Of a stretch of DNA of 64,000 nt, positions 11,508 through 25,104 are shown one piece after another (the first letter of the stretch is position 1; every line of letters starts with the position of its first letter). The stretch lies in sequence record NC_042136.1. One strand, 5' to 3'. Below the pieces are notes generated by a model. That model was given only the letters and a program-made list of their open reading frames with translations. It ran no database searches and was not told the origin of the DNA. Position numbers and translations under genes: made by a program.

Positions 11508-14500
11508 TTAGAACGGGTTAACCGTCGCTTGCTGTTTACGAGCCGCTTGGTTGTTCCCTTCGTTAATCGCGTTGAGTATCTGTGCCAATATCTGAGACTG
11601 GCTAGATAACGCTGCTTCGGTTTCGGGTTTCAGTTTCACATCCGCCTCCACTTTAACCGGTTCCGCCGGAGCCAACGACTTAGGCACCTCCACATCTTCT
11701 GGTTTCGGTGTGGTAGATTTAGGAACAGACACAGTTTTAACAGGCTGGTCTGTGGCGGTAGTTTTAGATGCAGGTGTTCGATTAACCTTAACCGCGGCGG
11801 AAGCTTGGGCTGGGGTGTCATCTAGAGATGGTGTAGGAATCGGTTTCGGCGTGGTTGCCGCTCGTTCTTCCTTCGCCAACGCATCTTTAGGGAGCGCTGA
11901 AGCTAGAGCGTTACCCCGAGTGAATTTGTTGTCGACTAAAACTCCGTTCTTGTATTGCTTTGATTTTTCCGCAATACGCTGTCCAACCCGATCTTCCATT
12001 TCGGACTTAGTCATGTGATTATCGACATAGTCGTTGATGTGTTTCTCGGTTTCGGACATTCCCGGGGCTGAGTCGTAAGGTGTATTCTCTTCACTCGGTA
12101 ACAAGTCTTTGGTGAGTTCACCGTTCAACAAATTATTCAGGTAATCGTTGTACAGGCGTTCACGTTTACCCATTCCCGGTAACGCTTTACCGCCGTTCAA
12201 CCCACGAGCAGCGAAAGTAAAGTCACCGTGGTCTTTGATGGAACGCATTTGTGGGTTGTTCTCGTAAAACCAAATAGCGGTCTTAGCCATGGTCTCTGGA
12301 TCTTCCGATACCAAACGAGGGTTGTTAACAATATCGATACCTAGATCCGCTCCCGCTTTTTCGTAGTTATCTTTACCGGTTAACTGTACTAGTCCACGAC
12401 CACGGTATAACCAACCATCGTTCTCTGAATCCGTATTACCTAACCAGCCGTTGTACACCGCATTCGCAAAAGCCACAGGACCTTGACGTATGATGTCTTC
12501 GACTTGTCGGATGTTGAATTTCTTCAACTTACGGAACAGATTACGGGCTCGTTGAGCATTTGAATAACGCATGTTCTCCGCGGTAGCTTTAAAACCTCCT
12601 GTTTCGTAATCCGTTAACGCTAACATCTCAGCGATTTCTCTAGGGTCGGTGTGTCCGCGTTTCACCATTTCTTGAATCAAGACTTTAACCATTTGGTCTT
12701 TGTCTAAAGAAACCCCTTTGTCATCACCGGGTTTGAGTTTCACCCCAGCGTCATACTTACGGTCGGTATTGACTTTGATTTGATCAAGTTCACCCGATAA
12801 CTGATTACGTGCCCATTGTTGCTCTCGTTTCTTACGACCGCGAGGTTTAGCTTTATCACGCATTTGTCCCGGAGTTGCTACTCCTCCTCGCAACGCTTCA
12901 AAGTCAGGCTTCGCATTCGGATCCGCCGTCATAGTACCCGGGGTCGGAGCGTAGACCGAATCATCCGTTGGTCGAGTGGGTCTTGTTAGTGATTGTTCTA
13001 AATCAGGGTCTTTGATCTTAGCTTCGTTTGCTTTAAGCTCTAGAGCGGTCATCAAACGTTTTACTTTAGTCGTCATCCCACAAGAACGTTCACCTTCAAA
13101 TGGTGCTTCATCAATCCCAAACAGACTACGTACACGTTCGTCGATCAGCACTGTCATTTCACTAACGCGACGAGCAAAGCGGAACTTAGCTGTAGAGGAC
13201 AACGTTTTCCATACCTTAGAAGGATCCCCACCGCGTTGATTGCGACACGTTTCATACCAAGCTGTGTAGACCGGTAGGAAACGATAGTTAAACCAACGTA
13301 GCGCCAGTTCACGACCACGCTTAGACGTAATACGGAACGTCATCGCAAAGGCTTTCCAAAACGCTTCATCGGTGTCATGGTACTGAGCTTTACCAGAAGC
13401 AAAGGTCATACGAGATTCCATCCAACGTTCCAGTTTCAACACGGCTTCTACACGCCAAGGCATGTTCTCGTCATTACCGTAAGCGGCTAGACGGAAAGCA
13501 GTGATGATCGCCACTGGTCGGTCACCCGGTAACATATCCGATACGTCAATGTCTTTGATGACTTCTGGTTGTTTAAACCACGTGTCCAGTTTGTCTTGTT
13601 TCTCTTGGTCTACGTAATCCCCGGTTAACTTAGCCCAAGCCGTAGACAACATGCCTTTTTCTTCATTCTCCTTGATCTGATGTTTGGTGTCCTTGATCAT
13701 CAAGTCGTCAGGGAGTTTCTCAAACATGTTGGTTTTGTCAGCTGACTTTTTGAATGCTTCGAAATAACGATTGACTTGAGCCATGGTATCCGCGTAGTCC
13801 AAAGCATAGACCTCCGGGGAGATCCAAACTTGGATACGGTACGGATTAGGGTTAACGTTTAGGATGTCCTCGTTCGCTTTCTTAGCTACCACAGCGACGT
13901 TTAGGTGTTTAGCTTCATCATACTGTTTAAAGTTCTGACAATGCAATTGACGCATCGCTGCTTGATAGATTAAGAAGATTGGTTTGAAACGTTTACCGAA
14001 CCACGTTACACCGTCTTGTAATCCTTGTTGGGTCTGACGACTTGCAAAGAACGGAGACAGTATTTTGTTGAACGGAGTGGATTCACTGAAATTAGCTTGA
14101 TTGTCATTAATACTGACATAGTTCTCGAGCTGAGCTTCCAGTTTCAATACTTCATTAATCAACTCTTCGTGTTGAGCATCAATACCGTATTGTGCCATAC
14201 GAAGTTTTTGCTGCGTGGTAAGATCACTAGCGGTAAAGTATTTGTACGCCGCGTAACCTGCTAAACCGGCACCTACTACTCCTAGTGTAATCGGGTTAAG
14301 TAAGAATGGAGCTGAAGCCGCCGCTATACCACCGAGTGAAGTACCCGCCATCCCTGCTATGGCTGATGCTGTCATACCTAGCCCGGCGACATCCAGACCA
14401 ACGGAACTGTAATCCAATACCTTATCAGTAATGGAACCTTCTTCAGGGTCTAGAGCGTCTCTGGCAGCGTCTAAAGCCATATCACCGCCGAACATAAGTC

Positions 14501-17500
14501 CTGCGCCTAAACCGACTTTAGTTAAACCACCCATTTTACCTAAACGAGGGAAACGACCACGACCTTTACGACCACGATGTTTCTTACCCTTACGATCATT
14601 ACCTGACCCATCCATCCCATCCATGATATCATCGACACCATCTTTAGCACGACGACCTAATAGCGCACCGGTTAACACTTTCCCTAATGAGAACAAACCT
14701 TTCGCGATAGTACCGTTCAGTTTCATCATGGTAGAGAAACCAGAAATACCTAAACCTAGGAACTTCTTGAACATAGCGAATAAACCACCACCTGCCATTC
14801 CCAATAGACTACCGAAAATCCCACCATCTTTCTTAGGCTTTCCATTCTCATCTTTTGGTCTAAGTGTGTCCGCGATATCGATAACCGAATCTTGGAACTG
14901 GGTTTTTTTGGCTTCTTTCTTACGGCGAATTTTATCCGCTAGTGAGTTAAGACGAACACCGGGTTTGTCAGGACGTACATCTTCATCGTCATCGACCAGA
15001 CTTTCCATCTGAGCTTTCACTTTAGGACCAAAGCTTTCCTTGGTCGGCATACGAGTGTCTTCACCCCAATGCTTACCCATCAATGCATAGATGGAATCTA
15101 AACGCGACGTAATCGGTTCGTACTTCCCATCACCCCTGATGACTTCTACGTCTTTACCTAAGATCTTACTCCCTAGTTTATCTCGCCCTTCGGTTTGTAA
15201 CCAATTAGAACCACGACCAATCATTTTGGTTAACGCACTACCGGCTTTGCTCAAAGAGTTAAGGGTTACACCCCCAACCGTTTGCAGTCCGTCATTAAGG
15301 TCTTCTAAAGAGATCAACTCATTACCTTCTTGGTCATAGACCGGACCAGTAATTTCTTTCCATCCCTTTATTTCGTTACCTTCTGCGTCGTAATACCAAC
15401 CATTCTTAAATCCACGACGAGTTAATACTGGTTCCGTATCTCCTTTAAGGTAAACGTTCAGTTGGTCCATTTCTGTCCCTAGGGTAGCCGCTACTTGCTT
15501 GGCTTTACCTACTGGGTCAATAGCTTTGAACGTTTTACTAACAAACGACTTAAATTGGTGTACCCCATCCAGTATTATTTCTCGACCGTCTGGGCCGAAC
15601 AACTTACCCATCAAGCGTTTACCTGATGCAGCTATAGCGGAACTCCCTTTACTTAGGTCGATTACCGTCCCTTTGATGTCCTTCCAAGACTTGATCACTT
15701 TACGGGAAGCTTGGTCGTAATAGTCACCTGCATTCTTTTTGGAAGCGTACAGAACCTCATTACCATCTTCATCGTAAAGGTCTTCGTCTTCATTAGGGGT
15801 GTTACCAGCATTAGCGATGTTGTTCAGTTTACCATATAACGTCGCTACAGCGGCACCACCGGCTAATAACGCGGCTGCTTTAGGATTTGACATTGCTGTC
15901 ACACCCAAGCCACCTAGTAGGCCACCTAACACCATCGGTTTGTTAGCGATTAACGATTCCACTCCTTTATTAAAGATATCAGCAGGAACAATACCGCGTA
16001 GACGTTCAATCAAAGATTGCTTGTCTTTTTGTTCTTGTTGTTTCTCTGGTGTGGTTTCTTCTTTATCTAAACCGTCAGTCCCAACTGTGGTTACTGCTTT
16101 TAATTTACGCAGTACAGCGAGTTGTTCGTTTTGTGTTTGACTGATCTCTGCTAACGTAGTGTTATTAGTGGTCATTAGATCCAGCATCGGATCAAGGTTA
16201 AGACCAACACCTGCTTTATCATTCCCGTGAATTGCTTGCAACAATTTCGTGTTGCTTTGAATTTCTACTAGGGTGTCCATGATATTGCTGAGAATGCCAC
16301 TGACTTCTTCCTGTAAGGGAAGGGGGGAGACCTGCGTACTAGAAAACCCATCGGAAAAAGGATAGGGAGTTTGACTATTATTAAGTGGAGTAGGAGTGTA
16401 ACGAGTACGACCTCCTAATTCTTCTTTAGTATCTACGCTATAACGTTCAGGTACTTTAGGAAGACTTAAGTCATGTCCTTTACCAGTTATTTGATCATGG
16501 AGTTGTTTCCAAATAAGTTCTTGGTTAACATACTCTTTATTGGTTTTCTCATCAACTTTAACGTAACCAGAAGATTTTAAACCTTCATCCAAACCTAAAC
16601 TGCGAACCAGATCAATTTTCTTAGAAACATCCGGGGTGTAGTTTTTGAGAGATTCCGTGCGCTCACTTAAACGATGGAGTAACTCTTTACCTTCCGCGGT
16701 AGGAACGACTAAACGAGCCATTAAACCGTCTAGGGTGTTTTCTTGTGTACGAGCAAGTTCTTCATCGGTGATTTGGAAACGAGCTCGAATTAAGTCCTCT
16801 ATTTCCTGAGCGTGATCTTCGTTTAGGTATTCGTCGGTTTGCATACGAATGTAATCGTACGGGTTAAAGATGTTGCCTTTATCCGATTCACGTGCTAAAC
16901 GTAATGATAACGCATCCAGTGCTTCTTTAGATAACACACCATCGGTGTCAATATCTTTAGCAATAGACTTAGCAGAATCCGCGTAGGAGTTGAGTTCCCA
17001 AGTAGGGGTTACGATACGTTCAACTTGTTTGTTTAAGTTGTCTGTGGTTGTTACACGAGACGTACGGTAGTCATAACGCAGCTTAGCCTCGTTATCATTC
17101 CCTGTACGGATTTTCTCTACCGAGTTATGGATCTCACTCAACAACGTAGGGATCTCTTCTGTTAAAGAACGAGAATCATGAATGGACCATACGGAGTTAT
17201 CCTTTAAACTAGCTAAGGTTTTCTCTTGGATTTGATAGAGACTTCCTTGAGACTCCTGAGCATTCTCACCGATTAGGTTAAACGCACCACCGGCGGCTTG
17301 CGTTGCTTTACGAATCGTGTACCACAACGCTTTAGGTATCGGGTCCTTATCCGCAGGTAGATCTTCGAGGTACTCTTCGTACGTTTGATCAGGGAGGTCC
17401 ATCATACCGGTTTCTTGGTAATGACGACCTAGTACGGTGCCAAGCGCTTTAGTAGAGTAAGATAAAGTGTCACCGAATTCCGTTAAGGATTTGTGCATTT

Positions 17501-18623
17501 CATCAAACTTCTTCGCTTGCTCAGGGTATTTTACTCTGAGTTTATTAACTAAGCGTTTACCAGCTGGTGTACCTAAGAACTCTGGTCCGCGCTCTACCAC
17601 GTACTGACCGATCATGCTGCCAATCATCTCACCAGCATTGATTCCCGCACCTTGGGACATTTCTGCTGCAAAACGTAAATCGCCTGTAAGCGATCCTAAG
17701 ACCTCTAAGCCTTCATTAATACTATCCTTGGAGATAAGCTCTCCAATCGCGTTACCGAACCCCCCAGCTCGACTCAAACTGGTTTTCAACACATTATCAC
17801 GAATACGACCTTTGGTCGCTTGTATAGCGCTGGTTTTTTCGTAATCACTGAGCCCGGTGTTTTTAGTGATGTCTTTCAACTCGGCGATCATACGGTGTTG
17901 GGACGCTTCCATGAACTTAAAGTATTTAGCACTGGTCAAAAACTGACGAGTCATTAAGTTGAGTTTAATCCCTTCACGTTTAGCTTGCACGTTCATTTGA
18001 TAATCATACAAACGTTGCAAGTTCGCATTCACTTCGTAAAGTTGCTCATTGTTTTGCAACCCTGCCGACAATTGCTTAGAACCAATGCTGCTCATAACAC
18101 GAGTCATCGTATCGGTAGCTTCTACCGTGATGGATGATTGTGTTTCTAGAGCTTCCAGCATTTGTTGTTCCATGTCTTCCGTAACGGTCTCCATGGATAA
18201 CCCGGGTTCTCGGTACTCTCCTTCTTTCTCCCAATCACTGAAATCCTTTTGACTGAATTCTTCTAATCCGTCAACGATTTTATTAGGTAACCGGTCTCGG
18301 AGTGATTCACTAAGAGTGCCTGATAAAAAGGCTAAATCGCCCATTAACTCAGCACTGTTTTCTTTAAACTCTTTGAACGCTTCTTTCTTACGACGATCTA
18401 GGTCTCGGTAGAAGTTGAAGGTCGTACCGAAAGAACTAGGCAATATTCGTCGTAATGTTTTAATCTTAGCATCGGTGTCCCCGATGGTGTTAGATTTTAA
18501 GGAAGAGAAAAATCCTTTAGATACTGATTTCAAAAAACCTTGATCTTTGTTTCCATCAAAGTCATAGTCGAAATCGAAATCGCCATCTAAGAAATCATCT
18601 CCCCAATCATTATCAGTAGCCAT
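11508..18623 (-). CDS. Tail tape-measure / virion-associated peptidoglycan hydrolase (phiKZ gp181-like) with a C-terminal GH19 domain
   Basis: 2371 aa; acidic N-terminus, long helical region and Gly-rich hydrophobic segments. GH19 motifs: LALTDYETGGF...ENMRYS...GWLYRGRGLVQLTGKDNY...GLNGG. Head-to-head with the vRNAP beta' gene as in phiKZ. Confidence 0.8.
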   Translation of the reverse strand: MATDNDWGDDFLDGDFDFDYDFDGNKDQGFLKSVSKGFFSSLKSNTIGDTDAKIKTLRRILPSSFGTTFNFYRDLDRRKKEAFKEFKENSAELMGDLAFLSGTLSESLRDRLPNKIVDGLEEFSQKDFSDWEKEGEYREPGLSMETVTEDMEQQMLEALETQSSITVEATDTMTRVMSSIGSKQLSAGLQNNEQLYEVNANLQRLYDYQMNVQAKREGIKLNLMTRQFLTSAKYFKFMEASQHRMIAELKDITKNTGLSDYEKTSAIQATKGRIRDNVLKTSLSRAGGFGNAIGELISKDSINEGLEVLGSLTGDLRFAAEMSQGAGINAGEMIGSMIGQYVVERGPEFLGTPAGKRLVNKLRVKYPEQAKKFDEMHKSLTEFGDTLSYSTKALGTVLGRHYQETGMMDLPDQTYEEYLEDLPADKDPIPKALWYTIRKATQAAGGAFNLIGENAQESQGSLYQIQEKTLASLKDNSVWSIHDSRSLTEEIPTLLSEIHNSVEKIRTGNDNEAKLRYDYRTSRVTTTDNLNKQVERIVTPTWELNSYADSAKSIAKDIDTDGVLSKEALDALSLRLARESDKGNIFNPYDYIRMQTDEYLNEDHAQEIEDLIRARFQITDEELARTQENTLDGLMARLVVPTAEGKELLHRLSERTESLKNYTPDVSKKIDLVRSLGLDEGLKSSGYVKVDEKTNKEYVNQELIWKQLHDQITGKGHDLSLPKVPERYSVDTKEELGGRTRYTPTPLNNSQTPYPFSDGFSSTQVSPLPLQEEVSGILSNIMDTLVEIQSNTKLLQAIHGNDKAGVGLNLDPMLDLMTTNNTTLAEISQTQNEQLAVLRKLKAVTTVGTDGLDKEETTPEKQQEQKDKQSLIERLRGIVPADIFNKGVESLIANKPMVLGGLLGGLGVTAMSNPKAAALLAGGAAVATLYGKLNNIANAGNTPNEDEDLYDEDGNEVLYASKKNAGDYYDQASRKVIKSWKDIKGTVIDLSKGSSAIAASGKRLMGKLFGPDGREIILDGVHQFKSFVSKTFKAIDPVGKAKQVAATLGTEMDQLNVYLKGDTEPVLTRRGFKNGWYYDAEGNEIKGWKEITGPVYDQEGNELISLEDLNDGLQTVGGVTLNSLSKAGSALTKMIGRGSNWLQTEGRDKLGSKILGKDVEVIRGDGKYEPITSRLDSIYALMGKHWGEDTRMPTKESFGPKVKAQMESLVDDDEDVRPDKPGVRLNSLADKIRRKKEAKKTQFQDSVIDIADTLRPKDENGKPKKDGGIFGSLLGMAGGGLFAMFKKFLGLGISGFSTMMKLNGTIAKGLFSLGKVLTGALLGRRAKDGVDDIMDGMDGSGNDRKGKKHRGRKGRGRFPRLGKMGGLTKVGLGAGLMFGGDMALDAARDALDPEEGSITDKVLDYSSVGLDVAGLGMTASAIAGMAGTSLGGIAAASAPFLLNPITLGVVGAGLAGYAAYKYFTASDLTTQQKLRMAQYGIDAQHEELINEVLKLEAQLENYVSINDNQANFSESTPFNKILSPFFASRQTQQGLQDGVTWFGKRFKPIFLIYQAAMRQLHCQNFKQYDEAKHLNVAVVAKKANEDILNVNPNPYRIQVWISPEVYALDYADTMAQVNRYFEAFKKSADKTNMFEKLPDDLMIKDTKHQIKENEEKGMLSTAWAKLTGDYVDQEKQDKLDTWFKQPEVIKDIDVSDMLPGDRPVAIITAFRLAAYGNDENMPWRVEAVLKLERWMESRMTFASGKAQYHDTDEAFWKAFAMTFRITSKRGRELALRWFNYRFLPVYTAWYETCRNQRGGDPSKVWKTLSSTAKFRFARRVSEMTVLIDERVRSLFGIDEAPFEGERSCGMTTKVKRLMTALELKANEAKIKDPDLEQSLTRPTRPTDDSVYAPTPGTMTADPNAKPDFEALRGGVATPGQMRDKAKPRGRKKREQQWARNQLSGELDQIKVNTDRKYDAGVKLKPGDDKGVSLDKDQMVKVLIQEMVKRGHTDPREIAEMLALTDYETGGFKATAENMRYSNAQRARNLFRKLKKFNIRQVEDIIRQGPVAFANAVYNGWLGNTDSENDGWLYRGRGLVQLTGKDNYEKAGADLGIDIVNNPRLVSEDPETMAKTAIWFYENNPQMRSIKDHGDFTFAARGLNGGKALPGMGKRERLYNDYLNNLLNGELTKDLLPSEENTPYDSAPGMSETEKHINDYVDNHMTKSEMEDRVGQRIAEKSKQYKNGVLVDNKFTRGNALASALPKDALAKEERAATTPKPIPTPSLDDTPAQASAAVKVNRTPASKTTATDQPVKTVSVPKSTTPKPEDVEVPKSLAPAEPVKVEADVKLKPETEAALSSQSQILAQILNAINEGNNQAARKQQATVNPF

Positions 18624-18644: not shown

Positions 18645-20087
18645 ATGAAACCTACAAACGTTTCTTTATTAAACCCAAGTAAAGTTGCTTGGTCGCTGAT
18701 GCGTCCTGTATCATCAGCGGATGTAAACGAGGGTTCTTCTACCAGCTTGCACCCAGACGGGTTGTATTCAGTAGAAACCTTCGGACGTGTGGGTAGTGAT
18801 GAACGTGATCGTAAGTTCTCTTACATTGACGTTAAACTACCCATTTTTAACCCTACGTATTTCAAATCCATGATTACCCTCAAATCTTTATATGCGGGAA
18901 TAATCAAAGGGACGGAATACGCCGTCTGGGATAATGAAAGCAAAGACTTCATAAAATCCAATCTACTCGATGGTGAAACTGGGTTCAGTTTCTTTATCTC
19001 CCATTTCAATGATTTGGAACCTAAGTTAACCGAGTCCTTTCGCCGTAAGAAAAAGATCGAGTTGTTCCACCGTTTTCAACCTCAAGCATTAACCAGTAAA
19101 ATCCTAGTTATCCCCGCCGGTCTTCGTGATGTACAGTTCTCTCCAGACGAACGCACCATCGAACCAGAGATTAACGAATACTACCGTAAACTGTTATTCC
19201 GTACTAAAGCAGTTGTTGTCAGTGATGGTGAAGAAAACTCCCCGGTTTACGATAACTTACGTTGGGGCGCACAGTCCAACTTTAACGACATCGATACTTA
19301 CATTCAAGGGTTGATGCGTGGTAAGACGGGATTCTGGCAGAAACGTGTGGCGACACGTGGTGTCGTTGGTGGTACACGTAACGTTATTTCAGCTCGTCAT
19401 GTTTCCATGGCCGATGCTGACGTTCCTACGGGTGTGGATGTTAACACCACCGATATCGGTATGTATCAAGCGTTGTTAGAATACCAGTACACGTGTCGAC
19501 ACGGTATGCTGAACGGTTGGTTACAAAACGTGTTCACTGCGGGTAACCCGATGGCGAAATTGGTGAACCCGAAAACGTTCGAATACGAATATAAAGAAGT
19601 AGACATTAAAGTGGTTGATAAATGGATGACCCCAGAAGGGTTAACTCGTTTGTTCAATGGCTTTAAAGACACACATCTACGTAGCAAACCTATCATGATC
19701 TCTGGGTCCCTTATGGGGTTGGTGTATGATGATGGTGAACATGTTCGTATTGTTGGTGACAAATCCGAGATCGGTGACCGGGATCCCAAACACTTACGTC
19801 CATTAACGTATATGGAACTATTTTACATCAGCTGTGGTAATTTGATCGAGACCCGTATGAGTCAGATCACTCGTTACCCGATCACCGGTGTAGGTTCCAT
19901 CTATCCTTCCAAGGTTAACCTCCGCACCACGATTGAATCTAAACCTCGCGTGTTGTTGGATGAGTTCTGGGAAGAAGGCCAACGTCTGAACAATTACCCT
20001 GTACTGACCGGGAAACCAAGTTACTTTGACGCAATGTCTGTAGACGGTTCTCGATTAGATCGCTTGGGCGGCGATTATGACGGTGAT
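18645..20087 (+). CDS. rpoC: Virion RNA polymerase beta' catalytic subunit (phiKZ gp180-like), exon 1
   Basis: beta' motifs LHPDGLYSVETFG, ILVIPAGLRD, RNVIS, ITRYP and the catalytic GGDYDGD. The frame stops immediately after the last Asp, at the intron. Confidence 0.9.
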
Positions 20088-20584
20088 TAAAAAGTGTGTT
20101 ATCACTATCGTAGTGTTATAGTTTAAATAACATTACGTGATAGAGATGAAAAACTTAGATAGCACATATAGTCCGGCTAGGCACGAAAGTCCTAGACCGT
20201 TTTCTCTTGAATTGCTGGGACGTCCATAAAAGTTTACAACCAAAGGGTGGCCTGAAAGGGCTCAAAAAACGACCTGAGGGTGTCGAAAGACAGAAATAAT
20301 AGTAAGCCTGCTCTATGCCAAACAATAACGCTACGGAGTGATGACAAGGGACAATCAGCAGCTACGCTTCCTAAGGGGATAACCTATGGAGCAAGTTCAA
20401 CGACTAGGGCCTTACCAGCCTGTACCTACTAGCAGAGTTTAGTGGGGAAGTGTGAGAATACCTAAGGGTTTAAGACCTATGGTAAAGATATAGTCTGTTC
20501 CCGGTTTAAGAGACCGGGCGGGTACCACCGTCGAGATGACGCACGCGTACCGGCTACCTAAGCGATTAGGTGGTGGACAATAAG
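20088..20584 (+). ncRNA. Group I self-splicing intron (IA-like, no ORF), 497 nt
   Basis: P AATTGCTGGGA (20210-20220), Q AATCAGCAGC (20353-20362), R GTTCAACGACTA (20395-20406), S AAGATATAGTCT (20485-20496). P3 TTCTC/GAGAA (20202/20454). The 5' exon ends in U with IGS GTTATC (20098-20103). Terminal G at 20584. Excision restores the frame. Confidence 0.93.
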
Positions 20585-20749
20585 CAACTTAACAGTAATG
20601 GTATTGAGGCAGAGGACTCAATCAAACAGGCTCTCAAACGTATGGGTGAACGCAGCTTCTATATTACCGGTTCTGGTGATTTCCTATACGAGCCGGTGGT
20701 GGAACCTCATGAATTCTTATTACGCGCTCTAACGAGTGGATTGGAGTAA
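20585..20749 (+). CDS. rpoC: Virion RNA polymerase beta' subunit, exon 2 (54 aa; not in ORF track)
   Basis: Translates QLNSNGIEAEDSIKQALKRMGERSFYITGSGDFLYEPVVEPHEFLLRALTSGLE*. The spliced junction DYDGD-QLN mirrors NADFDGD-QM. The stop lies 2 nt before the next ATG. Confidence 0.85.
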   Translation, partial: QLNSNGIEAEDSIKQALKRMGERSFYITGSGDFLYEPVVEPHEFLLRALTSGLE

Positions 20750-20751
20750 AC

Positions 20752-23700
20752 ATGCAATTTAAAGACGCCTTAGAGATCGATGCGATGTCGGTTGATGGCT
20801 TGGAAGCTTTGTATCCTTTGTTCTTCAAAGAGTACGTGCTTCGTCGTAAGAACGACCTCACTAATCCAAGATTCCATAACTTGAGTGATGTCGAATTACC
20901 TCGAGACGCAGCTTTCTTTTATTACCCTAAACATCAACAAGATTTAGGACCAAGCAACCAAGAACCAATGGTGGCTAACTACCCTGATGTTATTAACGTC
21001 GGGTTTGATAGTCAATACGAAGTGTTTGTGGGTAAGGCTCGTCCTGCTCCCATGGATGAGCGTAAACAGATACAACGCTACCGTAATGGTCATTTCAAAT
21101 ACAAATACGCTCGTAACTTAGCTCAGCCTTTGAACCGAGCGAAAGAGTTAGTGGTGATCAATAACGCTTTAGGACAACTAAAGTGGAATTACGTTCCTAA
21201 TCGTTTCTTAGCTTTCGATAAGAGTTATAACCAATTAGCGAACATCCTAGATATCATGAACAAATACACGACGGGTAACAACCGTCAGTTCTTCATGCGC
21301 ATCGAACTCCCTAACCAGATTCCTTTGCATCAGAAATTCGTGGAGTATTTCCGTCACTACGAAAAATTCTTCAGTCGCAATGAAGATGGTGAAATGGTTA
21401 TTACAGACCGTAATGACCAAGCGCTGCGTGATTTAAAACGCACTGGTGCTTTTTGGTTGTTTGACTGGTTTGCTTGGTTAAGCGGTAAATACGAGTATTC
21501 CTTATTTAACCGTTTGTCACCCGCTGCGTTAGAACGCTTAAATTTAGTCTTTACTAAAAACGGCAAAGCGGTTATACTTAAACCCGGGTTATTACGTAAC
21601 TGGTTGGATGAACTAAACAAAGTTACTGTAGTAAAAGGCGAAGAAACAGTCGACTACGAAACATCACAGCGAATTAACGCTGTTAAACGCACACTGACTA
21701 TTTTCATGAAGATGGTCACTTTTGTTGATCAGGAGGAAGTGGATGCTGGCGAAGTTGAAGAAGCTGGTGCAGATGAGAACGGGCGTACAGAGAAACGGGG
21801 TTCTACATCCTCAGAAAAAGAACACGGTGAGGCGGATGCCGACGTGGGTTCTGATGATGATTCTGATTTGTTCACTGATTTTCTCAATGGACTTGAAATG
21901 GACGCTGAGGGAGTGGATGGAGACTCCGGAGAAGAACCAAGCGGACGTGGTGCAGGATCAGATTCACGAGTTGATGAAGAAGAAACCATTGAAGCTTGGA
22001 CTGATGAAGTAGACGATACCGAATACCAAATTGAAGAAGCCGATATTCGTGCTGAACATCACCGTATGGTGGATGAAGATTTATCAGCGGGTGTCAAACG
22101 TGCTATTCAACGTAAAGCAAAAGATGGACAACTAACGAAATCTCAACAAGAGTTTTTCTTACGTCAATCCGAACGTTACAAAGAACTCGCTATGCCTAAC
22201 GGTCAAACGTTGGAAGAGTTCATTCGTTTAGACGAAGAGGCACTGCGTGATCTCCCGAGTGCAGTCGCTCCTAAGATGGTGGGTGTGGAAGATGAGTCTT
22301 ACTTAGAGTCCACAGTCAGTCATCTGAAAAACGGCTACGTAGAACACTTCATGATGAAGGATATGGTTCGTGCTATTCTTGCAGTACAACAAGCAGGGAT
22401 ATGTGTTACTAACTTCGACATGGATACGGTACATAACGTAGATGGCACTTACGATGTCTTTAAAGTGCAATTCCATCCAGTTGGTGGTAAAGCGGTAACT
22501 CGTAGTTTCCGCATAGCACGTGTGGGTAAAGACGGTACGTTCGTTATAGATGGGAAGAAACGCACTAAAGCACTTCAGCGTATCGATCACCCGATTCGTA
22601 AGCTGGATGATTACCGTGTAGGACTATCTTCTTACTACGGTCGTAAGTTAATTGTGAGTCGTTCTAAAGCGGTGGCTGACGATTACGGCGTTTGGTTATC
22701 TAAACAAATCCGCCGTCTGGGCCTTCGTGGTGACATCGACATCCATGTGGGTGGTGTTTACACTAACGATTATAAAGTCCCTCGTTTGTTCAGTTTGTTG
22801 TCTCGTCGTTTCACTACTATCAAAGTGAAAGATTTAGATTTGATGTTCGACATTAAAGCGATCATCGCTAAAGACGAAACATTAGAACCATTGTTTACTG
22901 CTGATCAAGCACCGATTGGTTTCCGTGGCAAAACACCGGTCATGCTCGATGCTTACGGTATGTTGACAGTAGGTAAAGAGTCCCTCGGGTCGTTGGAAGG
23001 TTACCTTGGTATCAACATCACTAAGGCTCCAGTCGAGTACGGTCAGATCAATATCAATGGCTACCGTTTCCCTATGGGTGTGGTGTTGTCTTATTACTTT
23101 GGTTTCGATGAGTTACTGAAGATCCTTAAGATCGAACCTAAAACGGTTCCGGGTGGTCAACGAGTGAAACTGGAGCAAGATGAGTTCGCTATTCGTTGTG
23201 CGGATGAAACCTTGATCTTTAACCGTCGTGATCCAATGTCTTCTTTGGTGTTCGGTGGTATGACGAAACTGAACAACTTGCACACCTTTAACCGTTTCGA
23301 TATGAACGATCCTGAAATTTGGGTGACCGCTATCGATAACCCTAAGGTGAAACCAACTCACTTCCGTGAGATGCATAACTTGCTCAACATGTTCATCGAT
23401 CCAATTACCCGTGATGAATTGAAACGTTTAGGTCACGCGACCAGTTTTGATTATTTGTTGATTGAAGCTACGGAAATGTTACGTACGGAGCAACACCGTC
23501 ACGAAGTAGAAATCGAAGAACAACGTTTCATTGGTTACGAAGCATTCGCTGGGACTATTTACCATCAGTTAGTGACTTCTGCTCGTCAACTGGAAGCCAA
23601 GGGGATGGATCCTCGTGCTACTTTCGATTTGAATCCGGAAGCCATCATGATGGAAGCTTGCATGAATGACACGTCAGTGGACATGGTGCAAGAAGTGAAT

Positions 23701-25104
23701 CCGATTCATGAAATCAAAGAGCAAGAAACCGTTACCTTCGGTGGTAATAATGGTCGTAGTGATGTAACCATGGTTCGTCGTACTCGTGGACAACTCCCTA
23801 CTTACAAAGGGGTAATCTCCGAAGCGGGTAAGGACTCGGGTAAAGTAGGTTACGTGACGTACACCACCAGTAACCCTAAGATCGCGGATTTCCGTGGTAA
23901 CATTGATAGTAGTCGAGATGTGGGTAAAGCTGGGTTAGGTTCCGTCACTATGAACTTGATGCCGGGAGCCAACAAAGATGATCCAAAAAGATCATTGTTC
24001 TCAAGTGTTCAACACTCACAGGGGACCAGTGCGGTTAACTACACACCTAACATCATGCGTAGTCCTTACGACATGGTTATCGCTCACCGTACTTCTGAGC
24101 TTTATTCTAAACCAGCTAAGAAAGCCGGTAAGGTAGTAGAAGTAACGAAAGACGGTATTCGCGTTGAATACGAAGATGGAACGAGTGATAGTTATCCTTT
24201 GGGCATTAAGTTGGGTGACGCTGCGGGTGAAGTCCACCGCCATAACCGCATTACCGATTTGTCGGTAGGTGATACTTTTGACGCTGGTGACATCCTAGGT
24301 TGGGATGAAGTGTATTTCCAACGTGATCTGGCTAACCCTAGACAAGTCGTTTGGAAGTGTGGTGTGATGACTCGTATAGCACTGATTGAAAACCAGTTCA
24401 CTTTCGAGGACTCCATCGAGATCTCTAAAGAGTTCGCTGAAGCAACTAAAACTTCTTACATCTTAGGTAATAAGTTTTATTGTAATTTCGACCAAGGGTT
24501 GAAAATGCACGTAGACATCGGCAGTGATGTAGACTACGAAACGATTTTATGTGACATCGAGGACGCGTCCTTGGTTGGTGTGGAAGAAGAGGAATCTGAT
24601 TTCATGTCTGGTTTGGATCGTTTGGGTACAAAACAAATCCGTAGTAATCACCACGGTAAAGTCGTTTCTATTGACGTTCGTTACAATGGTGATAAAGAGG
24701 ATATGTCTGAACCAGTCCGTAAGTTCGTGGAGAAGTTTGACCGTCTTCGTAAACGTCAATCTACCATCACTGGTGACGGTGTGGTGAATGGTAACGTTGC
24801 GGGGAGTCGTGGGATGCGAACGTCACTTGAACCCGGACAAGTTTCTATTGAAGTATTCGTAGAAGACTTTACTGAAACGACCACGGTGGATAAGTTCGTT
24901 ATCGGTAACCAGATGAAGGGTACCGTAGGCAACATCGCTCCTCGTCAATACTACACTAAAGATGGTCGTAAAGTGGACATTCTGTTCTCTTTCAAATCTT
25001 TGTTTAACCGAATGGTATTGAGTCTTCGTGACAAACTAGTCACCAACGAAGTCGTCATTCATACAACTCAATTAATGGTAGACGCCTACCGAGGAAACAA
25101 GTAA
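20752..25104 (+). CDS. rpoB: Virion RNA polymerase beta subunit, large part (phiKZ gp178-like)
   Basis: 1450 aa. beta motifs: EVNPIHEIKEQE-TFGGNNGRS, SEAGKDSGKVG, QFTFEDS, DKFVIGNQMKGTVG, DGRKVDILFS. Confidence 0.88.
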   Translation: MQFKDALEIDAMSVDGLEALYPLFFKEYVLRRKNDLTNPRFHNLSDVELPRDAAFFYYPKHQQDLGPSNQEPMVANYPDVINVGFDSQYEVFVGKARPAPMDERKQIQRYRNGHFKYKYARNLAQPLNRAKELVVINNALGQLKWNYVPNRFLAFDKSYNQLANILDIMNKYTTGNNRQFFMRIELPNQIPLHQKFVEYFRHYEKFFSRNEDGEMVITDRNDQALRDLKRTGAFWLFDWFAWLSGKYEYSLFNRLSPAALERLNLVFTKNGKAVILKPGLLRNWLDELNKVTVVKGEETVDYETSQRINAVKRTLTIFMKMVTFVDQEEVDAGEVEEAGADENGRTEKRGSTSSEKEHGEADADVGSDDDSDLFTDFLNGLEMDAEGVDGDSGEEPSGRGAGSDSRVDEEETIEAWTDEVDDTEYQIEEADIRAEHHRMVDEDLSAGVKRAIQRKAKDGQLTKSQQEFFLRQSERYKELAMPNGQTLEEFIRLDEEALRDLPSAVAPKMVGVEDESYLESTVSHLKNGYVEHFMMKDMVRAILAVQQAGICVTNFDMDTVHNVDGTYDVFKVQFHPVGGKAVTRSFRIARVGKDGTFVIDGKKRTKALQRIDHPIRKLDDYRVGLSSYYGRKLIVSRSKAVADDYGVWLSKQIRRLGLRGDIDIHVGGVYTNDYKVPRLFSLLSRRFTTIKVKDLDLMFDIKAIIAKDETLEPLFTADQAPIGFRGKTPVMLDAYGMLTVGKESLGSLEGYLGINITKAPVEYGQININGYRFPMGVVLSYYFGFDELLKILKIEPKTVPGGQRVKLEQDEFAIRCADETLIFNRRDPMSSLVFGGMTKLNNLHTFNRFDMNDPEIWVTAIDNPKVKPTHFREMHNLLNMFIDPITRDELKRLGHATSFDYLLIEATEMLRTEQHRHEVEIEEQRFIGYEAFAGTIYHQLVTSARQLEAKGMDPRATFDLNPEAIMMEACMNDTSVDMVQEVNPIHEIKEQETVTFGGNNGRSDVTMVRRTRGQLPTYKGVISEAGKDSGKVGYVTYTTSNPKIADFRGNIDSSRDVGKAGLGSVTMNLMPGANKDDPKRSLFSSVQHSQGTSAVNYTPNIMRSPYDMVIAHRTSELYSKPAKKAGKVVEVTKDGIRVEYEDGTSDSYPLGIKLGDAAGEVHRHNRITDLSVGDTFDAGDILGWDEVYFQRDLANPRQVVWKCGVMTRIALIENQFTFEDSIEISKEFAEATKTSYILGNKFYCNFDQGLKMHVDIGSDVDYETILCDIEDASLVGVEEEESDFMSGLDRLGTKQIRSNHHGKVVSIDVRYNGDKEDMSEPVRKFVEKFDRLRKRQSTITGDGVVNGNVAGSRGMRTSLEPGQVSIEVFVEDFTETTTVDKFVIGNQMKGTVGNIAPRQYYTKDGRKVDILFSFKSLFNRMVLSLRDKLVTNEVVIHTTQLMVDAYRGNK

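What the first reader, a model, noticed from the sequence alone, without database searches (positions are those of the whole stretch)
20088..20749. ORF-less group I intron placed directly after the vRNAP catalytic aspartate triad, with a hidden second exon
P, Q, R, S, P3, P1/IGS, a plausible P10 (AAGTGTG with exon-2 CAACTT) and the terminal G are all visible. Excision of 20088-20584 joins GGDYDGD to QLNSNG... and gives a 535-aa beta'. Unspliced RNA yields a product ending at the catalytic Asp, so splicing gates virion RNAP production. As I recall, the homologous site in phiKZ and phiPA3 holds endonuclease-encoding introns used in inter-phage interference. This copy has no endonuclease ORF, so it may be a late-stage relic or one retained because an occupied site is immune to cleavage by competitors' homing endonucleases.
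Basis: partly seen in the sequence, partly recalled or inferred. Interest (0 to 1): 0.7.

Follow-up and report, generated by a model that had tools for sequence, protein, structure and literature searches.

The report
ORF-less intron in phage polymerase gene
A 497-base self-splicing group I intron with no endonuclease gene interrupts the virion RNA polymerase beta-prime gene of Vibrio phage VP4B right after its catalytic aspartates; this is a new example of a known kind of phage intron, at a spot that related phages show to be a crowded intron landing site.

Summary
The window is Vibrio phage VP4B (Chimalliviridae). Rfam's group I intron model hits 20114-20518 at 51.2 bits, just above its cut-off of 50. 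Five intron-less relatives read GGD[F/Y]DGD-QLNSNG without a break, which fixes the junction at 20087|20585. That gives a 497-nt intron and a 535-aa beta-prime N-terminal subunit (phiKZ gp180 homologue). The exon ends in U and the intron ends in G. VP4B keeps 73 of 75 family consensus pairs, and 51 of those pairs show compensatory changes across 11 related introns. There is no endonuclease ORF or remnant, although most relatives carry a homologous ~420-aa HNH gene upstream of the core. Splicing itself is not shown, because no informative RNA data exist. The proposed P1 and P10 pairings are no better than chance.

The PhiPA3 gp210 intron lies in the neighbouring beta gene, and phiKZ is its intron-less target. 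HNH-bearing introns at VP4B's own site occur in Shewanella phage FishSpeaker and a Raoultella phage; phage EL's lies 6 nt upstream. "Gating" has no support.

About a fifth of the 120 best homologue clusters stop at the Asp triad, at four insertion points within 12 nt. Some carry tandem insertions around 9-12-nt micro-exons. Verdict: new member of a known kind.

The parts
18645..20087 (+). Exon 1 of the vRNAP beta-prime N-terminal subunit gene (481 codons, ends ...GGDYDGD). Annotated in RefSeq as a separate CDS (FDJ61_gp015).
   Evidence: ORF list. PHROG 2986 positions 5-488, E 2e-203. 94% identical to the uninterrupted pTD1 protein. RefSeq annotation.
20073..20087 (+). Codons for the Mg2+-binding Asp triad D-Y-D-G-D, the equivalent of bacterial beta-prime NADFDGD. 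The last base, U20087, is the 5' splice-site nucleotide.
   Evidence: Read from the sequence. Alignment with homologues. The DFDGD motif of phiKZ Gp180 is described in PMC10612078.
20088..20584 (+). Group I intron, 497 nt, without an ORF.
   Evidence: RF00028 at 51.2 bits. Boundaries fixed by intron-less relatives. 73 of 75 family consensus pairs kept.
20088..20090 (+). In-frame TAA formed by the first three intron bases. It would end translation of unspliced RNA right after the third Asp.
   Evidence: Relatives also stop at once or within 1-4 further codons.
20082..20103 (+). Candidate P1: exon GGUGAU (20082-20087) pairs with intron GUUAUC (20098-20103), with U20087-G20098 as the wobble pair. 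An alternative register uses AUCACU (20101-20106). The loop AAGU (20092-20095) could form P10 with exon-2 ACUU (20587-20590).
   Evidence: Pairing scan. Neither pairing is above chance, so this part is inference only.
20105..20143 (+). Long P2-type hairpin (15 bp with a 2-nt bulge). It occupies the place where relatives carry the ~420-aa HNH ORF. The first 82 nt of the intron match no relative.
   Evidence: MFE fold. blastn similarity to relatives starts only at about 20169.
20177..20195 (+). Hairpin with a GAAA loop. It holds the 17-nt family signature TAGGCACGAAAGTCCTA, identical in 8 of the 11 aligned cores.
   Evidence: Alignments A1, A2 and A4. 5 of its 7 pairs show compensatory changes.
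20202..20458 (+). P3 (20202-20208 with 20452-20458). It encloses P4 (20212-20218 with 20355-20361, the P and Q elements), P5 (20222-20225 with 20349-20352) with its extension helices (20232-20340), P6 (about 20362-20394), the R element / P7 5' strand (20395-20406) and a 42-nt P7.1/P7.2 insert (20407-20448).
   Evidence: cmscan alignment. RNAalifold consensus with compensatory pairs. Column-to-coordinate map.
20461..20496 (+). P8 (20461-20469 with 20475-20482) and the S element AAGAUAUAGUCU (20485-20496). UAGUC at 20491-20495 pairs with GACUA at 20402-20406 to form P7, the guanosine-binding helix.
   Evidence: The P7 pairing was read from the sequence; the Rfam model does not include it because it crosses P3.
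20500..20584 (+). 3' domain: P9 (20500-20518), P9.1 (20521-20551), P9.2 hairpin (20554-20573), the conserved tail GGACAA..G, and the terminal G (omega-G) at 20584.
   Evidence: The tail motif GGACAA is shared with PDCC-1, FishSpeaker, the Raoultella phage and phiKp_32.
20585..20749 (+). Exon 2: 54 codons (QLNSNG...TSGLE) plus the stop. RefSeq annotates 20570-20749 as a separate 59-aa CDS (gp016) that starts at a GTG inside the intron.
   Evidence: PHROG 2986 positions 491-539. 54/54 aa identical to pTD1. Annotation.

Best explanation
Positions 20088-20584 are a self-splicing group I intron. It looks like subgroup IA because it has a P7.1/P7.2 insert. It sits in the gene for the N-terminal half of the beta-prime-like subunit of the virion RNA polymerase of Vibrio phage VP4B. 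The intron lies between the codon of the third catalytic Asp and the next Gln codon.

Inferred mechanism: the pre-mRNA folds into the ribozyme. An external guanosine attacks after U20087. The freed exon-1 3'-OH then attacks after G20584, joining GGUGAU to CAACUU. The spliced mRNA encodes one 535-aa subunit that carries the complete Mg2+-binding loop. Unspliced RNA would be translated to a stop at the first intron codon.

The intron belongs to a mobile family found in chimalliviruses of Vibrio, Photobacterium, Pseudomonas, Shewanella, Raoultella and Klebsiella. In 8 of the 11 members compared, the family carries a homologous ~420-aa HNH homing endonuclease gene just upstream of the core. VP4B has lost that gene, so its intron cannot move on its own. 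It persists because only a base-precise deletion would leave the catalytic loop intact.

Shown here: intron identity, exact junction, conserved fold, and absence of the ORF. Inferred: splicing activity, ORF loss rather than never having had one, and the reason for persistence.
For: RF00028 hit at 51.2 bits against a gathering score of 50, E 4.5e-10, with the P, Q, R and S elements aligned.

The junction is fixed to the base by five intron-less relatives. The two exons cover PHROG 2986 at positions 5-488 and 491-539. U is at -1 and G is the last intron base.

Eleven related introns give a consensus of 75 pairs. 51 of them have compensatory changes, and VP4B keeps 73.

Homologous introns sit in the same 15-nt stretch of the same gene in phage EL, FishSpeaker, Raoultella phage VB_ZK_P1, 2 TSL-2019, PDCC-1 and metagenomic contigs. 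Each of these isolates and contigs L022, L049 and L050 carries an HNH ORF of PHROG 59 / Pfam HNH_3, and these are mutually 27-40% identical.

In the core tree VP4B sits inside a clade with 91/93 support, surrounded by HNH-bearing members.

No HNH remnant is in the intron or the window, and there is no homologue anywhere in the VP4B record at E<=1e-8.

The VP4B core is 90% identical to the PDCC-1 core, while the flanking exons are only about 65-85% identical to PDCC-1 and closest to VP4B's own genus. This fits lateral spread of the intron.

DNA contigs from separate runs cross both boundaries.
Against: There is no transcript evidence. The only run flagged as possibly RNA holds a single contig (20025-20176) that crosses the 5' splice site unspliced, and no run shows a joint.

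The Rfam score is only just above the cut-off.

P1 and P10 are weak. The register with the canonical U-G pair has three wobble pairs, and both pairings are matched or beaten by about a third of shuffles.

The first 82 nt, which must hold the internal guide, have no homologue, so covariation could not be tested there.

ORF loss rests on an unrooted tree with modest support.
Confidence: 0.85

Rival explanations
1. The insertion is a dead intron remnant. The subunit is made as two polypeptides: 481 aa, plus 59 aa started at GTG 20570. They would assemble non-covalently, like the other natural splits of chimallivirus RNA polymerases.
For: RefSeq annotates two CDSs. An in-frame GTG ORF spans 20570-20749. 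These polymerases are naturally split into several polypeptides (PMC7598289). No spliced RNA was seen.
Against: The ribozyme fold is intact, with 73 of 75 consensus pairs, and has canonical U and G ends. Exon 2 is 54/54 aa identical to the uninterrupted pTD1 protein and in phase to the base. The break would fall inside the active-site loop. By my reading of the sequence, no Shine-Dalgarno-like motif precedes the GTG. The natural beta-prime split site lies after the DPBB domain, which corresponds to the end of this 535-aa protein, not to this position.
Confidence: 0.06
2. The intron splices, and it is kept by selection as a plug. By breaking the target sequence, it would protect VP4B's polymerase gene from the HNH endonucleases of co-infecting relatives.
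For: HNH-bearing introns of the same family target this exact stretch in related Vibrio and Photobacterium phages. Intron endonucleases do act as weapons between chimalliviruses (PMC11620839). At least two further ORF-less copies exist in this codon stretch: L048 at the same site and L033 intron 1 after Asp1.
Against: Nothing here tests cleavage or fitness. ORF-less introns are the expected decay stage of the homing cycle without any benefit (established model of Goddard and Burt). I-HmuI-type HNH nickases recognise mostly downstream exon sequence and can cut intron-containing alleles (established knowledge), so protection is not guaranteed. Close relatives pTD1 and phiKT1028 persist without any intron.
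Confidence: 0.2
3. Splicing is regulated and times virion polymerase production.
For: Only that splicing is obligatory for a full-length product. In nucleus-forming phages, transcription is separated from translation (PMC12908238).
Against: No regulatory feature was found. Five close relatives make the same protein from an uninterrupted gene. The patchy presence of the intron fits a selfish element rather than a regulator.
Confidence: 0.05

Closest known systems
HNH-encoding introns at the same codon stretch of the beta-prime-N gene in Pseudomonas phage EL (gp184 / HNH gp185), Shewanella phage FishSpeaker, Raoultella phage VB_ZK_P1, Vibrio phage 2 TSL-2019 and Photobacterium phage PDCC-1
   Same: Same gene. 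Homologous ribozyme core, 66-90% identical to VP4B. They share the signature hairpin, and most share the GGACAA..G tail. FishSpeaker and the Raoultella phage have exactly the same insertion point, after Asp3.
   Different: All of them carry a 416-440-aa HNH ORF between the 5' splice site and the core, where VP4B has a 39-nt hairpin. EL sits 6 nt upstream (after Asp2) and 2 TSL-2019 sits 12 nt upstream (after Asp1). None of these introns is annotated in the records, and I found no paper that describes them.
PhiPA3 gp210 intron (Birkholz et al. 2024, PMC11620839)
   Same: A group I intron in a chimallivirus virion RNA polymerase gene, placed right after conserved catalytic-region aspartates. The relatives of VP4B's intron also carry an HNH endonuclease.
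   Different: It is in a different gene: the beta-like gp211/209, homologue of phiKZ gp178 and of VP4B 20752-25104. PhiPA3's beta-prime-N gene (gp212) is uninterrupted. The PhiPA3 intron carries a working nickase, and VP4B's carries none.
Phage T4 td, nrdB and sunY introns and SPO1/Bastille DNA polymerase introns (classical phage group I introns, subgroup IA)
   Same: Self-splicing intron in an essential phage gene at a conserved catalytic site, with an in-frame stop at the start of the intron. ORF-less variants are known among related phages (established knowledge; PMC11878797 and PMC2988022 are listed but were not read).
   Different: Different host gene and phage family. Here the endonuclease ORF of relatives lies in the P1-P2 region. 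The host phage family transcribes inside a phage nucleus, separated from ribosomes.

Membership tests
Group I intron (Rfam RF00028) | Conserved catalytic core (P3-P9 with P/Q/R/S elements) scoring at or above the curated threshold | tested here: met
   51.2 bits against a gathering score of 50, full model 1-253, E 4.5e-10. Related copies score 29.5-63.8 bits.
Group I intron (Rfam RF00028) | Core helices maintained by compensatory base changes among relatives | tested here: met
   51 of 75 consensus pairs have both-side changes across 11 introns. VP4B keeps 73 of 75.
Group I intron (Rfam RF00028) | U as the last exon base and G as the last intron base | tested here: met
   U20087 and G20584. 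The junction is fixed independently by intron-less homologues.
Group I intron (Rfam RF00028) | P1 helix with a U-G wobble at the 5' splice site, formed with an internal guide sequence, and P10 with the 3' exon | tested here: inconclusive
   A 6-bp P1 (20082-20087 with 20098-20103) and a 4-bp P10 exist but are no better than chance (34% and 38% of shuffles). No homologous 5' region is available for covariation.
Group I intron (Rfam RF00028) | Exons joined precisely in RNA; self-splicing with guanosine | tested here: inconclusive
   The one possibly-RNA run has a single unspliced contig across the 5' site and no joints. In-vitro splicing cannot be tested with these tools.
Subgroup IA group I introns | Extra P7.1/P7.2 helices between the P7 5' strand and the P3 3' strand | tested here: met
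   A 42-nt insert at 20407-20448 between the R element and P3'. RNAalifold pairs part of it, with compensatory changes. Finer assignment (IA1, IA2 or IA3) was not attempted.
Mobile (homing) group I intron | Encodes a homing endonuclease | tested here: not met
   No intron ORF exceeds 56 aa. No tblastn hit to eight family HNH proteins better than E 0.6. No homologue in the VP4B record at E<=1e-8.
vRNAP beta-prime N-terminal subunit (phiKZ gp180 family, PHROG 2986) | Full-length match to the family, including the D-x-D-G-D metal-binding motif and the C-terminal ~50 residues | tested here: met
   PHROG 2986 is covered at positions 5-488 and 491-539 by the two exons. The PhiPA3 gp212 annotation names phiKZ gp180 and EL gp184 as its homologues. 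Erwinia phage RAY's homologue is annotated as vRNAP beta-prime subunit 1. phiKZ Gp180 is a virion RNAP subunit with the DFDGD motif (PMC10612078). There was no Pfam hit and no solved structure by sequence search.

The most novel reading that the evidence does not exclude
The 15 nt that encode the metal-binding Asp triad of the chimallivirus virion polymerase may be a contested landing zone for several competing HNH intron lineages. There are four insertion points within 12 nt, and some genomes carry tandem insertions separated by 9-12-nt micro-exons. Under this reading, ORF-less copies such as VP4B's are not mere relics. They would be kept because they break the targets of those nucleases and so protect the phage in mixed infections.
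Probability: 0.2. Interest if true: 0.65.

Novelty: new member of a known kind. Interest (0 to 1): 0.45.

Why it matters
First, it corrects the annotation. VP4B gp015 and gp016 are one spliced gene, and the same error affects the PDCC-1 and 2 TSL-2019 records. In the EL, FishSpeaker and Raoultella phage records, exon 2 is not annotated at all.

Second, it adds a second intron-invaded polymerase gene to the chimallivirus story. So far that story rests on the PhiPA3 gp210 intron in the beta gene.

Third, it offers a natural test panel within one subfamily: no intron (pTD1, phiKT1028, phiKT1019, Aphrodite1, USC-1), an intron with HNH (2 TSL-2019), and an intron without HNH (VP4B). That panel can show whether an occupied site protects against intron endonucleases. 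It can also show how group I introns splice when transcription is separated from translation in a phage nucleus.

The clustering of four insertion points and the micro-exons in the catalytic loop is the most interesting by-product.

Tried and rejected
Transcript evidence: two run searches found one possibly-RNA run. It held only an unspliced contig across the 5' site, so splicing stays unshown.

P1/P10 covariation: the first 82 nt of the VP4B intron match no relative, and the guide sequence could not be located consistently in relatives. Both pairings are at chance level.

Co-conversion tract: the exon flanks of VP4B are closest to its own genus on both sides of the intron, and no donor-like tract is visible.

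Exon-like duplicate: I first read the 3' tail GGTGGTGGACAATAAG as a duplicate of the end of exon 1. I rejected this because the GGACAA..G tail is a conserved intron element in FishSpeaker, the Raoultella phage and phiKp_32.

Phage EL: I first read EL as having non-canonical splice ends. Comparison with GSDHDGD-type homologues shows that its exon 1 ends after Asp2 and its exon 2 starts with GGCGATCAA, so both ends are canonical.

More family members: IMG/VR held only the same three isolates. A 17-mer scan of metagenomes gave 30 loci, of which only two are real relatives.

Other searches: Pfam and a sequence search of the PDB gave nothing for the protein.

Assembly artefact: rejected, because separate DNA runs contain the intron-bearing sequence.

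Full report
WHAT THE WINDOW IS. Positions 18645-20760 are 100% identical, at the same coordinates, to Vibrio phage VP4B (KC131130 / NC_042136; Chimalliviridae, Gorgonvirinae, Tidunavirus). RefSeq annotates three consecutive 'RNA polymerase beta subunit' CDSs: 18645-20090, 20570-20749 and 20752-25104. No intron is annotated.

CHECK OF THE OBSERVATION. The ORF from 18645 ends ...GGDYDGD. Its last codon GAT is at 20085-20087, and a TAA follows at 20088-20090. CAA at 20585 opens QLNSNG..., which runs to the stop at 20747-20749. Rfam's group I intron model RF00028 matches 20114-20518 on the + strand over its full length at 51.2 bits (gathering score 50, E 4.5e-10). This is the only Rfam match in the window. 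The classical elements align: P (AAUUGCUGGGAC, from 20210), Q (AAUCAGCAGC, to 20362), R (GUUCAACGACUA, 20395-20406) and S (AAGAUAUAGUCU, 20485-20496).

PHROG 2986, a 539-position family, is matched by exon 1 at positions 5-488 (E 2e-203) and by exon 2 at 491-539 (E 5e-07). The decisive evidence is comparative. Relatives pTD1, phiKT1028, phiKT1019, Aphrodite1 and USC-1 have one uninterrupted 535-536-aa gene that reads GGD[F/Y]DGDQLNSNG. The bases on either side of each boundary differ, so the junction cannot slide. It is 20087|20585, the intron is 497 nt, and the product is 535 aa. The exon ends in U and the intron ends in G, as group I chemistry requires. Contigs from separate DNA runs cross both boundaries, so this is not an assembly artefact.

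THE GENE. PhiPA3 gp212 is the homologue, and its record names phiKZ gp180 and EL gp184 as relatives. Erwinia phage RAY's homologue is annotated as vRNAP beta-prime subunit 1. PhiKZ Gp180 is a virion RNA polymerase subunit that carries the metal-binding DFDGD motif (PMC10612078). The interrupted gene is therefore the N-terminal beta-prime-like subunit of the virion polymerase, and the intron sits between the third catalytic Asp and the following Gln. The next gene (20752-25104, 1450 aa, PHROG 3148) is the phiKZ gp178-like beta subunit.

IS THE RIBOZYME INTACT? Blastn with the intron finds related cores in 23 phage records, all from jumbo phages. I aligned eleven cores: VP4B, PDCC-1, 2 TSL-2019, EL, FishSpeaker, Raoultella phage VB_ZK_P1, Klebsiella phage phiKp_32 and four metagenomic or assembly contigs. 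RNAalifold gives 75 consensus pairs covering the signature GAAA hairpin, P3, P4, P5 and its extensions, part of P7.1, P8, P9 and P9.1. Of these, 51 pairs show at least one both-side change. VP4B forms a standard pair at 73 of the 75. P7 (GACUA at 20402-20406 with UAGUC at 20491-20495) can be read directly from the sequence. A 42-nt insert between R and the P3 3' strand fits the P7.1/P7.2 helices of subgroup IA. The whole intron folds better than all 100 shuffles (z = -2.5).

The weak point is the 5' end. The best P1 is 6 bp, either GGUGAU with GUUAUC (U-G at the splice site, three wobble pairs) or with AUCACU. Shuffles of the same sequence equal or beat these in 34% and 38% of trials. The first 82 nt of the intron match no relative, so covariation cannot settle the matter.

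NO ENDONUCLEASE, AND WHY THAT LOOKS LIKE LOSS. No intron ORF exceeds 56 aa. tblastn with eight family HNH proteins finds nothing in the intron better than E 0.6 and nothing in the 64-kb window. The whole VP4B record has no match to the PDCC-1 enzyme at E<=1e-8.

In contrast, PDCC-1, 2 TSL-2019, EL and its relatives, FishSpeaker, the Raoultella phage, phiKp_32 and contigs L022, L049 and L050 all carry an ORF of 416-457 aa. It lies between the 5' splice site and the signature hairpin. The ORFs belong to PHROG 59 / Pfam HNH_3, and some also show NUMOD1. They are 27-40% identical to one another. In VP4B that space holds a 15-bp hairpin at 20105-20143.

In a maximum-likelihood tree of the cores, VP4B groups with L048, PDCC-1, L033 intron 1 and the 2 TSL-2019/L049 pair (support 91/93). 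HNH-bearing members lie inside and outside this clade. Loss of the ORF is therefore the economical reading, though the tree is unrooted. Two other ORF-less copies have different short 5' regions, which suggests separate deletions. They are L048 (88% protein identity to VP4B, same site) and L033 intron 1.

The VP4B core is 90% identical to PDCC-1's. The flanking exons are only about 65-85% identical to PDCC-1 and are closest to VP4B's own genus on both sides, with no visible co-conversion tract. The intron has thus moved between lineages more recently than the genes diverged.

WHAT IS NOT SHOWN. Splicing itself is not shown. The only run flagged as possibly RNA holds one contig, 20025-20176, which is unspliced across the 5' site. 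No run shows a joint. This neither supports nor refutes splicing, because the contig may derive from DNA or from pre-mRNA.

The structural reading is right. The comparison with phiKZ and PhiPA3 is not. According to PMC11620839, gp210 lies in an intron in the beta-subunit gene gp211/209, after two conserved Asp residues of that subunit, and its target is the intron-less phiKZ gp178. The PhiPA3 record confirms this and shows that gp212, the homologue of the VP4B gene, is uninterrupted. PhiKZ-like phages carry a free-standing HNH gene right next to the beta-prime-N gene. In phage U5 it is at 244000-244701 beside 244853-246277, and it is 28% identical over 245 aa to the intron enzyme. 'Gating' has no support: five close relatives make the same protein without an intron. 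The 'immune occupied site' idea remains an untested hypothesis.

THE WIDER PICTURE, BEYOND THE FINDING. Among the 120 best protein clusters homologous to exon 1, 24 end inside or just after the Asp triad. Sequence inspection shows four insertion points within 12 nt:
- After Asp1: 2 TSL-2019, L049 insertion 1 and L033 intron 1.
- After Asp2: EL, L022 and L050.
- After the Gly codon: L033 intron 2. L051 also has a 254-nt insert here that Rfam does not recognise.
- After Asp3: VP4B, L048, FishSpeaker, the Raoultella phage and the second L049 insertion.
These rest.

Where the 3' end is present in the record, each insertion is flanked by U at -1 and ends in G. L049's first insertion is the exception: it is flanked by U at -1, but its exact 3' boundary was inferred from the sequence printed. 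Two contigs carry tandem insertions. L033 has two ORF-less RF00028 hits separated by the 9 nt CACGATGGT. L049 has an HNH intron, then the 12 nt TTTGACGGTGAT, then a second insertion with its own HNH_3 ORF.

PDCC-1 has the 5' part of the Asp1-site intron, with an HNH 100% identical to that of 2 TSL-2019. This is joined at the signature hairpin to a VP4B-type core and an Asp3-site 3' end. As a result, the 12 nt for YDGD are absent from the record. This could be a collapse of two tandem introns, either real or in assembly. I could not decide which.

VERDICT. The finding is real and correctly delimited. It is an unannotated, apparently undescribed ORF-less member of a mobile group I intron family in a chimallivirus virion polymerase gene, so it is a new member of a known kind. 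Literature searches found no description. Interest is moderate. The hot-spot pattern and the micro-exons raise it somewhat.

Noticed in passing
L033 1-1130 (metagenome contig OGVK01003917.1): Two ORF-less group I intron hits lie in tandem (121-510 at 29.5 bits, 547-875 at 38 bits) inside the Asp-triad codons of a chimallivirus beta-prime-N gene. Exon 1 ends ...GLDSD at 121. A 9-nt micro-exon CACGATGGT (His-Asp-Gly) lies at 550-558. The last exon starts with GATCAATTA at about 952.
   Followed up: partly
L049 2930-5534 (Logan contig ERR11042258_7836): Exon 1 ends ...LGAD. It is followed by an HNH intron (RF00028, 62 bits), then a 12-nt micro-exon TTTGACGGTGAT (Phe-Asp-Gly-Asp), then a second insertion that carries another HNH_3 ORF. 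The contig ends before the core of the second insertion.
   Followed up: partly
L002 2920-4660 (Photobacterium phage PDCC-1, NC_048821 160343-162083): Hybrid intron. The 5' splice site and HNH are of the 2 TSL-2019 type (after Asp1, with C instead of U at -1). The core and 3' splice site are of the VP4B type (after Asp3). The 12 nt encoding YDGD, which include two catalytic Asp, occur nowhere in the locus. This is either a real recombinant or a collapse of tandem introns.
   Followed up: partly
Proteins P0001-P0120: 24 of the 120 best homologue clusters end in or just after the Asp triad. This implies insertions at four positions within 12 nt: after Asp1, after Asp2, after Gly and after Asp3.
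   Followed up: partly
L051 5455-5711 and 9078-9418 (Logan contig ERR15804849_4502): A 254-nt ORF-less insert lies between the Gly and Asp3 codons, with U before it and G at its end. Rfam does not recognise it as a group I intron, even at E<=10. A separate RF00028 hit (32.7 bits) lies at the end of the 1090-aa beta-like ORF, reminiscent of the PhiPA3 gp210 site.
   Followed up: partly
L006 1560-3340 (Klebsiella phage phiKp_32, LC768500): The same intron family, with an HNH ORF (457 aa) and an RF00028 hit at 51.3 bits, interrupts a different RNA polymerase gene. PHROG 3295 is split at positions 402/403. The intron is not annotated in the record.
   Followed up: partly
L012 1542-3724 (Aeromonas phage PS1, NC_070998): A partial match to the intron core lies just downstream of the nuclear shell protein gene and a 475-aa ORF, and is followed by a 52-aa ORF. 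This may be an intron in or next to the chimallin gene.
   Followed up: no
window 20085-20087, compared with L003, L004, L007, L009 and L010: All five intron-less Gorgonvirinae alleles use GAC for the third Asp, so C would be at -1. All alleles with an insertion after Asp3 use GAT, so U is at -1 (VP4B, L048, FishSpeaker, the Raoultella phage, L049 second insertion).
   Followed up: partly
Pseudomonas phage U5 MT995928, 244000-244701 beside 244853-246277: PhiKZ-like phages carry a free-standing HNH gene directly beside the beta-prime-N gene. It is 28% identical over 245 aa to the intron-borne HNH of PDCC-1. The link to phiKZ gp179 is my inference from the PhiPA3 annotation note.
   Followed up: no
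window 11508-18623 (- strand): A 2371-aa ORF is transcribed divergently from the polymerase gene. It is annotated as tail fiber or endolysin in relatives, and the homologue in L050 carries a Glyco_hydro_19 hit. The arrangement of this gene next to beta-prime-N and beta is conserved from Vibrio to Pseudomonas phages.
   Followed up: no
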